A DNA stretch of 62,963 bases, counting the filler, from Octopus bimaculoides (Eukaryota): NCBI RefSeq assembly GCF_001194135.2. It is 7 parts of 7 records of this genome, joined end to end, with 100 filler letters (N's around TTAATTAATTAA, not from the genome) between each part and the next. Parts side by side here need not be neighbours in the genome. Positions count along the whole stretch, not along the records: positions 25,007 to 41,551 come from NC_069005.1; 6 more parts are not named here. One strand, written 5' to 3'. The notes below the pieces were generated by a model. It ran no database searches, was not told where the DNA came from, and saw only the letters and a list, made by a program, of their open reading frames with translations. Positions 26,659 to 30,989 of this stretch are shown piece after piece. Each line of letters begins with the position of its first letter. The first letter of the stretch is position 1. Both the position numbers and the translations under genes were made by a program.

Positions 26659-27020
26659 CAAATCAATCAAATATGGACGGGCTGTGTGAAGAGCAATTAC
26701 ATGTTGGAATTCTTGAAATTCAGGGTGGCTTTTCTGAACATAAGGCTGCTCTGATAAAAGCTGCACAACTTATGGGAATTGAAGCTATGCTAAAAATTTA
26801 TTCTGTACGCAAAGTTGAAGATCTGCTTTCCAAACTTTGTGGTTTGATCATTCCTGGAGGTGAAAGTACTACAATGGGTCTCTTCATCACACGCAACAAA
26901 ATGGCTGATGCTCTACAAGACTGGATCAAAGATGAAAAACACATTGTGTGGGGAACTTGCGCTGGCCTGATCATGTTAGCAAATCAGTCAGAGAAACAGA
27001 AAATTGGCGGACAGTCTTTG
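26659..27020 (+). CDS. PDX2: PDX2 exon encoding the N-terminal half (acceptor at 26658; first in-exon ATG at 26673)
   Basis: Acceptor ctttatattccatttag|CA. Frame MDGLCEEQLHVGILEIQGG...PGGESTT...GTCAG...GGQSL. Donor gtaagc at 27021. The 14 nt before the ATG are open in frame, so an upstream exon (UTR or coding) is expected. Confidence 0.92.
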
Positions 27021-29024
27021 GTAAGCTGTTGATGTTTGATTTCTTGTTGTATAAATCAGAATGTATAGTAATGGAGTTGAAGAAATTTATTTATTGAACT
27101 AAATATCTTAGAGGATTTAGTTTTGGTTCCTCTACAGTTTGGAGGGTTGCAAAGAAAAGGTGGAATCAGATTTTCCTTTCAGCTGTCATATGCTCAACAC
27201 TCATGACAGGTTTCTCCAGTTTCTATCTTCTATTTTCACTTAAAAGGTCTTGTTTAATCTCTGGCTATGATATAGAACATAATTTGACAACATTCATATA
27301 GTGGGACTGAACCTCTAACCACACGGTTTCTGTGATGAAAGAAAGATAAAGAAATAAAAATAATAACATTAACTTCCAACAGAAGTCAATCTCAAAGGGG
27401 GAGATGTTGTGGCACCCCTGGCAGATTGGAGAATGGACTAGCCGGACTCTTACAAATTGTTATAGTTCGGAATAGTCAGGGAGAGCGTTTTGGTAGTCTT
27501 GCGAAGTACGTTGCGTGAACACATTGATTAAACCTCCGCAGTATTAATTTATCTATACCAACCTGTAGCAGGATATAAAAATTCCTAAGCAAGCTTCTTA
27601 ACCACACAGCCATGAGTGCATCTATGCTGTGTAATTCCAAAAGCATTTTAATCTGTGAACATTGTCAAAAGTACTTTTAAATGTACATTATAGCAAACAT
27701 CTTTTACTGTCATGTTAAGATCACATTATCATCTTATTATCAAATTACTTTTAAAACAAACTTTTAATTTTCTTATGTTTTGACAGACACTCTTTAGAAA
27801 AATAGTCTGTGCAAAACCAAATATATGGTACCGTAGCCATAATACAGACTTGAACTTTTAACTTGTTGTCTCTTGAGGTCTCTGGGCGAGGCTTGGAGTC
27901 AACTTGTCCAAATACAAAGCAAAAGCCAAACGTATAATAATACTAATAATAATTATACTTGTTGTAGCCCGATGTTAGGAAATTTTCTTTTTCAACAGTT
28001 TAATCTGTTGTGCGTATGTGAAATTATAATGATAATAATAGAGACAATAATCCACTGGGAATTATGTAGAAAGCTAAGATTTGAACATACTGATAAGTGG
28101 TATGAACTTGAACCTAGAAAGTAAGAAATATAAGATATTGTGGAACTTTAACATTCGGACGGACAGAGTAATAGAAGCTACTACTACTAAATTTAGTAGT
28201 AGTAAGCAAAGAGGATAGAAAGTGCCAAGTAATTGACTTAACAGTTCCGAATGAGGAACAAAGTTAATACGAGAGGTATAGAGAAAATAGCAAAGAACCA
28301 GAACTTAGCCATTGAGTTACAGAGGCTGTGAAAATTGCGGGTAAAATGTATCCCTGTAGTTATAGGTGCATTAGGAACTATTCCTAAAGGTTTGAACTGG
28401 TGGATAGAGGAAATAGGCATAAGACCTAGTTTAGTTCAGCTCCAGTAAACAGTATTATTAGGGACAGCTAGGATACTTAGGAAGGTTCTTGGCATCTAAG
28501 GTTACTTGTTGTAGCCTGATGTTGGGAATTTTTCTCACAGTCTAATCTGTTGTGCGTAAATGAAATAATAATAATAATAATAATGATAATAATGATAATA
28601 ATCCTTTCTACTAAAGGCACAAAGCCTGAAAATTTGTGGGAGGGGGCTAGTCGATTACATCAATGATTGGTACTTATTTTATTGACCCTGAAAGGATAAA
28701 AGGCAAAGACAGCTTTAGTGGATTTTGAACTCAGAACCTAAAGATGGACAAAACACAGTTAAGCACTTTGTTTGGTGTGCTAACCATTCTGTCAGCTCAC
28801 TACCCTTAATAATAAAAATAAAAATGGTTTCAAATTTTGGCACAAGGCCAGCAATTTCAGGGGAGTGGGTAAGCTAATTACATCAACTGATGTTTACTTT
28901 CTTGACCTCAAAAGGATGAAAAGCAAAGTTGACCTTGATGGAATTTGAACTCAGAACATAAAGGCGGGCAAAATCGTGCTATGTATTTTTCCTAGTACAC
29001 TAACAACTCTGCCAACTCATTGTT

Positions 29025-29062
<38 letters not shown>

Positions 29063-29946
29063 TAATTCGTTTAATTGGCCACAAGGGCTAATATCAATTA
29101 AGAACATATAAGGACAAAGACAGGACGAAGGTTACAGAAGGTTTTGTCCGAAAAGGGAAGGAAAGTTCGTCTAAACAGAGGAAGAAAACGGAGAAAGATA
29201 TAATGAATAAATAGATAAATAANNNNNNNNNNNNNNNNNNNNNNNNNNNNNNNNNNNNNNNNNNNNNNNNNNNNNNNNNNNNNNNNNNNNNNNNNNNNNN
29301 NNNNNNNNNNNNNNNNNNNNNNNNNNNNNNNNNNNNNNNNNNNNNNNNNNNNNNNNNNNNNNNNNNNNNNNNNNNNNNNNNNNNNNNNNNNNNNNNNNNN
29401 NNNNNNNNNNNNNNNNNNNNNNNNNGAATAATAATAAACAAAAAAAAAAAAGAAGAGGAAGAAGAATGTCTTGTCTTGGTGTGAAAAATGGGTTGCAACA
29501 AATATTCTGCTCAATACCACAGATTTGCTTGTCAGTTGTTTGACCTTAAATCAGTTGAGCATGTCTCTTGGTGGTTGGCAATATGTTCATCTCTGATTAC
29601 TAGCAGAAGTAGTGGGGGAGTATCACAGCCATGTGTTGAAAGGAATTCTTTGGAGTTTGAATAATTCATCTCTGGAAACATGAGTGTTTCATTCATCATC
29701 ATTAAACAACCCTTATTCAGGAACCTTTTGAGTGGGATGGGCTACTTGACCAGAAGATAATTCTAACTTGGCTCCACCTGCAAGGTGGTGCACTGTTTAT
29801 CTTGATATGGGATCACTATGTTGTGCATCATATGGTTGTGATGCATGTGCCTGGTGTACCCTTATCAGACGGGTAGTCAGGGTATATTGGGCTTCGTACA
29901 TTTGTACCCCATTGTCACTTTGATGGCATGTGCTGCTCTCTCACTC

Positions 29947-30004
<58 letters not shown>

Positions 30005-30989
30005 GTAAGGATAATGGTAAATGCCCTGATGCAGTACTATGCTGAAGTACCCATGTTTTTCACTTGGAACAGAAGTAACAAAGAATGGCAAAGGAAAATG
30101 TGAGGTAAAACAGTTGAAGGCCATTTGAGTGTTTTCAAAGAAGAAAGTTTTGATCATATTTATGTTGTCACACCAAAGGCAGGAGAACTGTGTTAGTTAA
30201 AAATTGTATTGCATGAAGTTCAAAATAGTATCTTTTTCTTTCCCGTTGTGCATTGACATTTCAACTTGGAGTGGTTGTGACCCAATGGGTTATGGTACAA
30301 AGACCTGGAAATAGAGGTAACTCGAATGTGGAATCTAAAAACAGAAACAATTCCTATCATAGTAGGTGTCTTAGGTATAATAAAAAAATATTCAGACAAA
30401 TACATAACAAAAACACCAGGACTTACAAATATATATAACATACAGAAAATTGCACTACTGGGCACTGCACACATCCTACGCAAAACACTTTCAATACAGT
30501 AACCATAAGAGCACCACAGCAAACCACAGCACATACCCAAGGCACAGAGAGCTGCGCTTGGTAGTGAAGTGAAAGCACGTTATAAAAATAAAACTACTGA
30601 ACAATAATAATAATAATAATAATAGCAACAATTCGTTTATATATTTTCAGATTGGTGGACTTGATATTGTGGTTTCTCGTAACTATTTTGGCCGTCAAGT
30701 GAACAGTTTCCAAGGGAAGGTGAAAATTGTGGATAAAAGTCTTCTCAAAGAAAATACACCTAGTTATTTTGAAGGTGTCTTTATCCGTGCTCCTGCAGTT
30801 GTCAAAGTAAACAGCCCTGAAGTCTCTACCCTTGCTGTTCTTCCACATTCATCAAAAGAAAAATCTGACACAATTGTAGCAGTGAAGCAGAAGAATATAA
30901 TAGGCACAGCGTTCCACCCAGAGTTAACAGAAGACCTTCGGTGGCATGAATATTTTCTGAAAATTGTCCTTTTTGTACAGAATCATTGA
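26673..30989 (+). CDS. PDX2: Pyridoxal 5'-phosphate synthase glutaminase subunit (Pdx2/PdxT/SNO family), two coding exons join(26673..27020,30651..30989), 228 aa
   Basis: The spliced frame is open from ATG 26673 to TGA 30989 across a phase-0 GT-AG intron (TTG|gtaagc at 27021; ttttcag|ATT at 30650). Family motifs: GILEIQGGFSEH, IPGGESTT, WGTCAGLI (nucleophile Cys96), GGLDIVVSRNYFGRQVNSF, GVFIRAP, TAFHPEL (His205/Glu207). Confidence 0.95.
28046..28565 (+). mobile_element. R4/Dong-like LINE 3' end (restriction-like endonuclease, 3' UTR, (TAA)n tail) in the PDX2 intron
   Basis: IIHWELCRKLRFEHTDKWYE..KILWNFNIRTDRVIEA..LVVVSKEDRKCQVIDLTVP..IPVVIGALGTIPKGL..TVLLGTARILRKVLGI*. An extra copy of the 3' UTR lies at about 27956-28025. 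Confidence 0.85.
28600..29012 (-). mobile_element. Two tandem, CpG-decayed SINE family 2 copies in the PDX2 intron
   Basis: Colinear with 61021-61240, with CG mostly changed to TG/CA. Confidence 0.8.
30296..30623 (+). mobile_element. 3' end of a second R4/Dong-like LINE family with (AAT)n tail, just upstream of the last PDX2 acceptor
   Basis: YKDLEIEVTRMWNLKTETIPIIVGVLGIIKK..IQKIALLGTAHILRKTLSIQ*, then a 3' UTR and (AAT)n. Confidence 0.82.
30651..30989 (+). CDS. PDX2: PDX2 terminal coding exon
   Basis: Acceptor gtttatatattttcag|ATT GGT GGA. Encodes IGGLDIVVSRNYFGRQ...FIRAP...AFHPELTEDLRWHEYF...QNH*. Candidate AATAAA signals near 31235 and at 31472. Confidence 0.93.
   Translation: MGGLDIVVSRNYFGRQVNSFQGKVKIVDKSLLKENTPSYFEGVFIRAPAVVKVNSPEVSTLAVLPHSSKEKSDTIVAVKQKNIIGTAFHPELTEDLRWHEYFLKIVLFVQNH

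What the first reader, a model, noticed from the sequence alone, without database searches (positions are those of the whole stretch)
26659..30989. Intact, intron-bearing PDX2 (de novo vitamin B6 glutaminase) in an animal genome
Seen: a 228-aa open spliced frame with PGGEST, GTCAG (Cys96), RNYFGRQ..SF, FIRAP and FHPE (His205, Glu207). A GT-AG intron full of host SINEs and LINEs argues against bacterial contamination. Established: Pdx2/PdxT supplies ammonia to Pdx1/PdxS in DXP-independent PLP synthesis; vertebrates and common model animals lack the pathway and depend on dietary B6, and reports in animals are patchy (e.g. a sponge SNZ/Pdx1). The KQKIGGQSLIGGLD segment looks like the plant and fungal type rather than the shorter bacterial form. 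Inference: this probably cephalopod lineage kept an ancestral B6 biosynthesis pathway, or has redeployed the glutaminase.
Basis: partly seen in the sequence, partly recalled or inferred. Interest (0 to 1): 0.8.

Follow-up and report, generated by a model that had tools for sequence, protein, structure and literature searches.

The report
Octopus PDX2 vitamin B6 glutaminase gene
This is a real, expressed and conserved octopus gene for the glutaminase half of the vitamin B6 (PLP) synthase, but it is already annotated in public databases and the same pathway is annotated in many marine invertebrates, so it is ordinary.

Summary
Exon 26659-27020 (ATG at 26673) joins exon 30651-30989 through a GT-AG, phase-0 intron to give a 228-aa protein. 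It scores as Pdx2/PdxT (Pfam SNO 3e-48; TIGR03800 170 bits against a cut-off of 105.55), carries Cys96/His205/Glu207, and gives a confident Pdx2 fold (pLDDT 93.7).

The assembly gap lies inside the intron. RNA-seq reads run from 27020 directly into 30651, so the gap does not affect the reading frame.

The protein is 100% identical to Octopus bimaculoides XP_014787260.1, named "probable PLP synthase subunit PDX2". The partner PDX1 is also annotated in O. bimaculoides, on a different chromosome-sized record.

Descent looks vertical. The intron position is shared with other cephalopods, a limpet and a sponge, and animal PDX2 sequences group together in 99 of 100 bootstrap replicates. Selection is purifying (dN/dS 0.05 against O. 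sinensis).

PDX1 and PDX2 are annotated across molluscs, cnidarians, annelids and sponges.

Two corrections. The transcript has a further 5' exon outside this piece. It probably adds about 21 residues if it holds an in-frame ATG as in O. sinensis. Also, the "long" GQK.GGQ..IGGLD segment occurs in some bacteria too.

Verdict: gene call and interpretation supported; already known; low interest.

The parts
25007..26658 (+). 3' part of the first intron of PDX2; the 5' exon lies upstream of the piece
   Evidence: RNA contigs X1 and X13 carry ...ATCTGTCGTCTCCGTCCACGAAAATAACGT directly before 26659. This sequence is absent from the window. It differs by 1 base from the O. sinensis exon 1, which lies about 9.5 kb upstream of exon 2 in L001. 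RNA depth is 0 at 26560-26654.
26659..27020 (+). Exon 2 of PDX2: 14 nt before the ATG, then CDS 26673-27020 (codons 1-116, including PGGEST and the catalytic Cys96 at 26958-26960)
   Evidence: Exon limits come from RNA contigs and reads; translation; motif positions.
27021..30650 (+). GT-AG phase-0 intron (3630 nt as assembled). It contains the assembly gap 29223-29425, two SINE-like copies (about 28600-28800 and 28822-29020), (AAT)n tracts, and two fragments that may derive from a retrotransposon
   Evidence: The splice is shown by reads crossing 27020 to 30651. The repeat families have further copies at 36882-36982, 37445-37604 and 38121-38244. RNA depth over the repeats is very high, as expected for multicopy sequence. 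The same intron position is 854 nt long in O. sinensis.
30651..30989 (+). CDS part of the last exon (codons 117-228 plus TGA), including RNYFGRQ, FIRAP, His205 (30915-30917) and Glu207 (30921-30923)
30990..31241 (+). 3' UTR, seen up to at least 31207, with an AATAAA at 31236-31241
   Evidence: RNA contig X1 covers 30650-31207 without a break. The AATAAA was read directly from the sequence. The exact poly(A) site was not determined.

Best explanation
This is the Octopus bimaculoides PDX2 gene (LOC106881397), the class-I glutamine amidotransferase subunit of the DXP-independent PLP (vitamin B6) synthase. Inferred mechanism, from the family: Cys96, with His205 and Glu207, hydrolyses glutamine. 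[quoted passage not shown] The gene was inherited vertically from the animal ancestor and is kept under purifying selection. Shown here: gene structure, splicing, transcription, family membership, catalytic residues, fold, presence of the partner gene, conserved intron position, and selection. Inferred only: glutaminase activity, complex formation with PDX1, and actual B6 synthesis in the animal.
For: Family and fold: Pfam SNO 3.4e-48. TIGR03800 equivalog 170 bits, above its cut-off. PDB Pdx2/PdxT hits down to 2.4e-30. AlphaFold model with pLDDT 93.7 and pTM 0.91. The best structural matches are plasmodial Pdx2 and B. subtilis PdxT in PLP synthase complexes, TM 0.84-0.91. Active site: Cys96, His205, Glu207, and the PGGES, RN.(F/Y)G.Q and FIRAP motifs are invariant in 36 sequences from animals, plants, a fungus and prokaryotes. 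Expression and splicing: reads and contigs join 27020 to 30651, with zero depth in the unique intron flanks. 14 runs labelled 'RNA?' from 6 studies hold 0.70-0.88 of the sampled words; the exon makes up about 0.72 of the query. Identity: 100% to XP_014787260.1 / A0A0L8FST5. Partner: O. bimaculoides PDX1 (XP_052824270, 344 aa), Pfam SOR_SNZ 3e-105, with the PVMAKARIGH and RTKGEAGTG lysine motifs intact and 7 coding blocks found by tblastn (residues 1-9 unplaced). Vertical descent: the same phase-0 intron site (GGQxx|IGGLD) occurs in Octopus (two species), Argonauta, Acanthosepion, Lottia and the sponge Amphimedon. NJ bootstrap support is animals 99/100, cephalopods 100/100, molluscs 74/100. Selection: against O. 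sinensis dN is 0.013 and dS is 0.248, ratio 0.053.
Against: No enzymology or B6 labelling exists here or in the papers found. PDX1 and PDX2 are not linked in cephalopods, unlike Lottia, so co-regulation is not guaranteed. The true start codon is uncertain (228 or about 249 aa). The tree is only distance-based, with limited sampling of non-animal eukaryotes.
Confidence: 0.9

Rival explanations
1. Horizontal acquisition: the gene came into molluscs or cephalopods from a bacterium, plant, alga or fungus, rather than from the animal ancestor.
For: After animals, the next best hits are plants at about 45-51% identity. HGT of this pathway is on record for cyst nematodes; this is my recollection of Craig et al. 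2008, and PMC5664098 and PMC4901422 surfaced but were not read.
Against: Animal sequences form one group in 99/100 bootstraps, with cephalopods, molluscs and cnidarians nested roughly as the species are related. The intron position is identical in sponge, limpet and four cephalopods. PDX1 intron positions are also shared between Lottia and Octopus.
Confidence: 0.03
2. Contaminant or symbiont sequence mis-assembled into the octopus genome.
For: None was found. Only the general worry about prokaryote-like metabolic genes in animal assemblies applies.
Against: A spliceosomal GT-AG intron carries repeats that recur elsewhere in the piece. The locus is collinear with the independent O. sinensis assembly. 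Orthologues are annotated in O. vulgaris, Argonauta and Acanthosepion on large scaffolds. Spliced mRNA is present in many runs of the same organism.
Confidence: 0.01
3. Redeployed glutaminase: PDX2 is kept for a role independent of PLP synthesis, for example stand-alone glutamine hydrolysis or a moonlighting or stress role.
For: PDX1 and PDX2 lie on different chromosome-sized records in octopus. No biochemical data exist for any mollusc.
Against: PDX1 is retained, intact and highly conserved (82% identity to Lottia) in the same genome. The two genes co-occur in nearly every animal that has either one. From the literature on the family (my knowledge), Pdx2 alone is essentially inactive without Pdx1.
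Confidence: 0.05
4. Decaying relic or unitary pseudogene in the making.
For: The lineage is carnivorous with a B6-rich diet, and expression is modest (about 5-15x depth in the 6% of two runs of about 30 Gb each that was read).
Against: The frame is open and all catalytic and invariant residues are kept. dN/dS is 0.053. The gene is correctly spliced in many RNA runs.
Confidence: 0.01

Closest known systems
Octopus bimaculoides XP_014787260.1 / UniProt A0A0L8FST5 (LOC106881397, 'probable pyridoxal 5'-phosphate synthase subunit PDX2')
   Same: 228/228 residues are identical; it is the same gene.
   Different: Nothing differs in the protein. The RefSeq model starts at the ATG in exon 2. The O. sinensis and O. 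vulgaris models (249 aa) start in an upstream exon, which RNA contigs show is also spliced on in this species.
Plasmodium falciparum Pdx2 (PDB 2ABW, 4ADS)
   Same: Best solved-structure relative: E=2.4e-30 by sequence, 35-36% identity in the structural alignment, TM 0.84-0.89. It has the same Cys-His-Glu triad and a long loop before IGGLD.
   Different: The plasmodial loop is 4 residues longer still, and the C-terminal LTED.RWH motif is not conserved there.
Bacillus subtilis PdxT/YaaE and Thermotoga maritima PdxT (PDB 2NV0, 2NV2, 2ISS)
   Same: Same fold (TM up to 0.91 normalised to the target), the same triad, and the same RN.FGRQ, FIRAP and FHPELT motifs.
   Different: They are 186-196 aa, 3 residues shorter in the segment after the nucleophile helix and shorter in two surface loops. 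They are encoded in a pdxS-pdxT operon and have no intron.
Sponge SNZ/SNO (Suberites domuncula; Seack et al. 2001, cited in PMC7954711) and Amphimedon queenslandica PDX2
   Same: These are animal PDX1/PDX2 genes of the same family. Amphimedon PDX2 is 48% identical and has its intron at the same codon boundary.
   Different: The taxon differs. The Suberites genes themselves were not examined here.
Lottia gigantea PDX2/PDX1 pair
   Same: Molluscan orthologues, with PDX2 51% and PDX1 82% identical to the octopus proteins, and the same intron positions.
   Different: In Lottia the two genes sit head to head about 2 kb apart. In octopus they are on different chromosome-sized records, and none lies within the window or within 10 kb in O. 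sinensis.

Membership tests
Pdx2/PdxT/SNO glutaminase subunit of PLP synthase (Pfam PF01174; TIGR03800) | Sequence scores above the curated family thresholds | tested here: met
   PF01174 164.5 bits (cut-off 27), covering profile positions 1-185 of 188. TIGR03800 equivalog 170.3 bits (cut-off 105.55).
Pdx2/PdxT/SNO glutaminase subunit of PLP synthase | Catalytic triad Cys-His-Glu in the GTCAG and FHPE contexts | tested here: met
   Cys96, His205 and Glu207 are present and invariant in 36 aligned homologues. They align to the same motifs of PDB Pdx2 chains.
Pdx2/PdxT/SNO glutaminase subunit of PLP synthase | Conserved motifs PGGES, RN.FG.Q, FIRAP and N-terminal QG; their roles in the oxyanion hole and glutamine binding are recalled from memory and were not tested | tested here: met
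   Q17, G18, P61-S65, R126, N127, G130, Q132 and F160-P164 are invariant columns.
Pdx2/PdxT/SNO glutaminase subunit of PLP synthase | Class-I glutamine amidotransferase fold closest to solved Pdx2/PdxT | tested here: met
   Model pLDDT 93.7. The top 26 PDB matches are all Pdx2/PdxT, and HisH comes only after them.
Pdx2/PdxT/SNO glutaminase subunit of PLP synthase | A Pdx1/PdxS synthase partner encoded in the same genome | tested here: met
   O. bimaculoides PDX1, P0156, 344 aa, SOR_SNZ 3.1e-105; its locus L006 is on a 127-Mb record.
Pdx2/PdxT/SNO glutaminase subunit of PLP synthase | Pdx1-dependent glutaminase activity and PLP formation by the complex | not testable with these tools
   This needs recombinant proteins or complementation assays.
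Functional (non-pseudogene) animal gene | Transcribed, correctly spliced, and under purifying selection | tested here: met
   Junction reads, presence in many RNA runs, and dN/dS 0.053.
Vertically inherited metazoan gene (as opposed to HGT) | Animal monophyly and shared intron positions | tested here: met
   Animals group in 99/100 NJ bootstraps. The phase-0 intron site is identical in six animals, including a sponge. Caveat: the tree is distance-based and no unicellular holozoans were sampled.

The most novel reading that the evidence does not exclude
Octopus, and by extension most molluscs, cnidarians, annelids and sponges, is a true vitamin B6 prototroph with an active PDX1/PDX2 PLP synthase. 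This would contradict the statement still made in B6 reviews that animals cannot synthesise B6 (PMC7954711; 'most animals' in PMC6071262). In coleoid cephalopods the ancestral head-to-head PDX1-PDX2 gene pair has also been split. The genes are in the databases, but I found no paper showing enzyme activity for any bilaterian or discussing cephalopods.
Probability: 0.75. Interest if true: 0.35.

Novelty: already known. Interest (0 to 1): 0.15.

Why it matters
The result matters little for discovery. The gene, its name and its orthologues are already in RefSeq and UniProt, and the sponge genes were published in 2001. There is a modest general point. Genome annotation shows the de novo B6 pathway retained across many marine invertebrate phyla, while biochemical reviews still generalise that animals cannot make B6. 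A biochemical demonstration in one bilaterian, and a dated map of the losses (vertebrates and the usual model animals, which lack the pathway by established knowledge; not tested here), would tidy this up. It would also bear on invertebrate nutrition and aquaculture.

Tried and rejected
1. I looked for PDX1 next to PDX2, as in Lottia. PDX1 was then found on another record through a Lottia-derived query.

I replaced it with two smaller stretches.

4. I tried to bridge the assembly gap with DNA contigs. The flanks are high-copy repeats and no contig crosses. The left side only continues as ATAAGTAGAA.CCCC.AAGGGGGAGGCGC.

5. The first bootstrap count used rooted clades on arbitrarily rooted replicate trees, so it under-counted and dropped the animal node. 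I redid it with unrooted splits.

6. dN/dS for deeper pairs could not be computed for most pairs because synonymous sites are saturated. Two deeper pairs gave ratios on dS of about 2; only the O. bimaculoides-O. sinensis ratio is used.

7. An Rfam scan of the piece, run to look for tRNA-like SINE heads, gave no match at E<=0.1.

8. A Pfam scan of the neighbouring expressed exon gave no family.

9. Literature searches for a paper on PDX1/PDX2 in cephalopods or molluscs found none, including zero hits for 'SNZERR'.

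Full report
**What is in the sequence.** Between 26659 and 30989 on the + strand there are two coding exons. The first runs 26659-27020, with its ATG at 26673. The second begins at 30651 and its coding part ends with TGA at 30987-30989. Both coding parts are whole numbers of codons (348 and 339 nt). The donor is TTG|GTAAGC and the acceptor TTTTCAG|ATT, so the intron is phase 0. 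The joined frame gives 228 residues.

**The assembly gap.** The N run at 29223-29425 lies inside the intron (27021-30650).
- Alignments to solved Pdx2 proteins and to orthologues cross the exon junction (..GGQSL|IGGLD..) with no missing residues.
- Raw RNA-seq reads from two 2026 runs (17 and 5 reads) and RNA contigs from two older runs continue from 27020 straight into ATTGGTGGACTTGATATTGTGG, which is 30651 onward. Depth falls to zero in the unique intron sequence on both sides of the first exon.
- An ungapped O. sinensis contig has the same two exons in the same order and orientation, separated by an 854-nt intron.
- Short DNA contigs could not bridge the gap because both flanks are high-copy repeats.

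The gap's true length is therefore unknown, but it has no bearing on the reading frame.

**What the protein is.**
- Pfam SNO scores 3.4e-48 over nearly the whole profile.
- The NCBIfam equivalog model TIGR03800 (PdxT) scores 170 bits against a cut-off of 105.55.
- The best solved relatives are plasmodial Pdx2 (2.4e-30) followed by bacterial and archaeal PdxT.
- An AlphaFold model built on a 36-sequence alignment is confident (pLDDT 93.7, pTM 0.91).
- The model's top 26 PDB matches are all Pdx2/PdxT chains, several in PLP synthase complexes (TM 0.84-0.91). HisH appears only after them.
- The triad and the PGGES, RN.FG.Q and FIRAP motifs are invariant across animals, plants, a fungus and prokaryotes.

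**Whose gene it is.** The translation is 228/228 identical to Octopus bimaculoides XP_014787260.1 / UniProt A0A0L8FST5, LOC106881397. One source names it 'probable pyridoxal 5'-phosphate synthase subunit PDX2'. The O. sinensis and O. vulgaris orthologues are 97% identical and are annotated the same way. This gene is therefore already known and named.

**One correction to the gene model.** RNA contigs start exon 2 at 26659 and carry ...ATCTGTCGTCTCCGTCCACGAAAATAACGT before it.
- That sequence is not in the window.
- It differs by one base from the end of O. sinensis exon 1, which lies about 9.5 kb upstream and begins with ATG CCG TCT GTC....
- It reads in frame into exon 2 (..LSSPSTKITS|NQSNMDGL..).

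So 25007-26658 is intron. The protein may be about 249 aa, as modelled in O. sinensis and O. vulgaris, rather than 228 aa. The extension is not conserved in Argonauta or Acanthosepion, so the catalytic domain is unaffected.

**Is the pathway there?** Yes.
- A PDX1 query assembled from the Lottia locus retrieved O. bimaculoides PDX1 ('SNZERR', 344 aa). It also retrieved orthologues in O. sinensis, O. vulgaris, Argonauta and Acanthosepion.
- O. bimaculoides PDX1 scores 3.1e-105 on Pfam SOR_SNZ.
- It keeps the PVMAKARIGH and RTKGEAGTG motifs. I recall these as holding the two catalytic lysines.
- tblastn places it in seven coding blocks, leaving residues 1-9 unplaced. Five of the junctions coincide with those of Lottia PDX1.
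- It lies on a 127-Mb record, whereas PDX2 lies on a 35-Mb record.

**Vertical descent or transfer?** The PDX2 intron sits at the same codon boundary (GGQxx|IGGLD, phase 0) in O. bimaculoides, O. sinensis, Argonauta hians, Acanthosepion pharaonis, the limpet Lottia and the sponge Amphimedon. In a neighbour-joining analysis of 35 sequences the supports were:
- 22 animal sequences as one group: 99/100
- cephalopods: 100/100
- molluscs: 74/100

. This is a simple distance method without unicellular holozoans. Together with the shared intron, though, it makes horizontal transfer or contamination very unlikely.

**Selection.** Against O. sinensis, dN = 0.013 and dS = 0.248, a ratio of 0.053. Deeper comparisons are saturated at synonymous sites.

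**Expression.** 14 runs labelled 'RNA?' from six studies hold 0.70-0.88 of the sampled words of a 501-nt query. The exon makes up 72% of that query.

**How common is this?** PDX2 is annotated in:
- cephalopods, a chiton, bivalves and gastropods
- hexacorals, octocorals and sea anemones
- an annelid and a sponge

PDX1 is annotated in the same groups, plus a scyphozoan, a second annelid and a tunicate.

In the literature I could search, reviews say animals cannot make B6 (PMC7954711). Others say 'most animals' lack the enzymes (PMC6071262). The only exception mentioned is 'some sponges', citing Seack et al. 2001. I found no paper on the cephalopod or mollusc genes. The gap is one of biochemical confirmation and review-level awareness, not of discovery.

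The PdxT proteins of Thermotoga and B. subtilis are 3 residues shorter between the nucleophile helix and IGGLD. However, 207-214-aa proteins from metagenomes and genomes have the long form. One of them (P0075) sits in a compact pdxS-pdxT operon beside P-II, Amt, S15 and PNPase genes on a 5.3-Mb contig, which is a bacterial context. The segment is therefore not a eukaryote marker.

**Repeats in the intron.**
- Two copies of a SINE-like element of about 200 nt (about 28600-28800 and 28822-29020) have relatives at 38121-38244 on the same strand. They also have relatives at 36882-36982 and 37445-37604 on the opposite strand.
- These stretches and several others in the intron have RNA and DNA depths hundreds to thousands of times that of the exons, as expected for multicopy elements.
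- Two stretches (about 28350-28448 and 30326-30502) encode ..IP(V/I)(V/I)(I/V)G.LG.I.K.. peptides. I recall these as the C-terminal tail of invertebrate retrotransposon ORFs, but this was not tested.
- No Rfam family matched.

The O. bimaculoides intron (3630 nt as assembled) is about four times the length of the O. sinensis one.

**Verdict.** The gene is already annotated and the pathway is broadly annotated in marine invertebrates. Novelty: already known. Interest: low.

Noticed in passing
window 39874-40245 (- strand), joined to 39151: An exon of an unidentified minus-strand gene. In run X1 its contig depth is about 9,000-24,000, but it is absent from X23, X24 and X13. A CT..AC joint (GT..AG on the minus strand) skips 39152-39873, and another splice lies at 40245. 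It encodes a Ser/Asp-rich peptide (..SSDSSSSDDDDDSSDQHKG..SSLPTYEDAM..) with no Pfam match.
   Followed up: partly
upstream of window 25007 (not in the piece); L001 10001-10050: PDX2 has a 5' exon outside the piece. The O. bimaculoides RefSeq model (228 aa) starts at the exon-2 ATG, while the O. sinensis and O. vulgaris models (249 aa) start in that upstream exon. RNA contigs show the exon is spliced on in frame here too, so the 228-aa model may be N-terminally short.
   Followed up: partly
L002 4210-7959 (-) and 10001-11065 (+); L006; In Lottia, PDX1 and PDX2 sit head to head about 2 kb apart. Adjacent or near-adjacent locus tags in Patella, Desmophyllum and Mactra suggest the same arrangement. 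In Octopus, Argonauta and Acanthosepion the two genes lie on different large records, so the ancestral pair appears to have been split in coleoid cephalopods.
   Followed up: partly
P0198 and P0203: PDX1 ('SNZERR-like') is annotated twice in the tunicate Clavelina lepadiformis, on 15-20-Mb records. This would place the synthase subunit in a chordate. I did not check whether it is genuine, and no tunicate PDX2 appeared in the top 120 PDX2 hits.
   Followed up: no
window 32639-32978 and 34546-34888: A pair of inverted copies about 340 nt long and 89-97% complementary flanks about 1.6 kb. Both arms match one O. sinensis segment (L001 21443-21829). It could be two inverted copies of a repeat or the ends of a DNA transposon.
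   Followed up: no
window 25007-25234; L001 14022-15374: The left edge of the piece matches a tandem array of units about 169 nt long in the first intron of O. sinensis PDX2, with at least 9 overlapping hits at 88-91% identity. It is well covered by RNA reads (depth about 40-57).
   Followed up: no
window 31270-31349 and 31392-31471: An 80-nt inverted repeat (88% complementary, 42-nt spacer) lies just downstream of the PDX2 AATAAA, and short RNA contigs cover it. It resembles a MITE-like hairpin element.
   Followed up: no
window 27021-30650 compared with L001 19874-20727: The conserved PDX2 intron is 3630 nt (as assembled) in O. bimaculoides, 854 nt in O. sinensis, 745 nt in Argonauta, 4932 nt in Acanthosepion, 378 nt in Lottia and 2389 nt in Amphimedon. 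The extra length in O. bimaculoides is probably SINE-like copies, possibly retrotransposon-derived fragments and (AAT)n tracts (the insertions were not mapped).
   Followed up: partly
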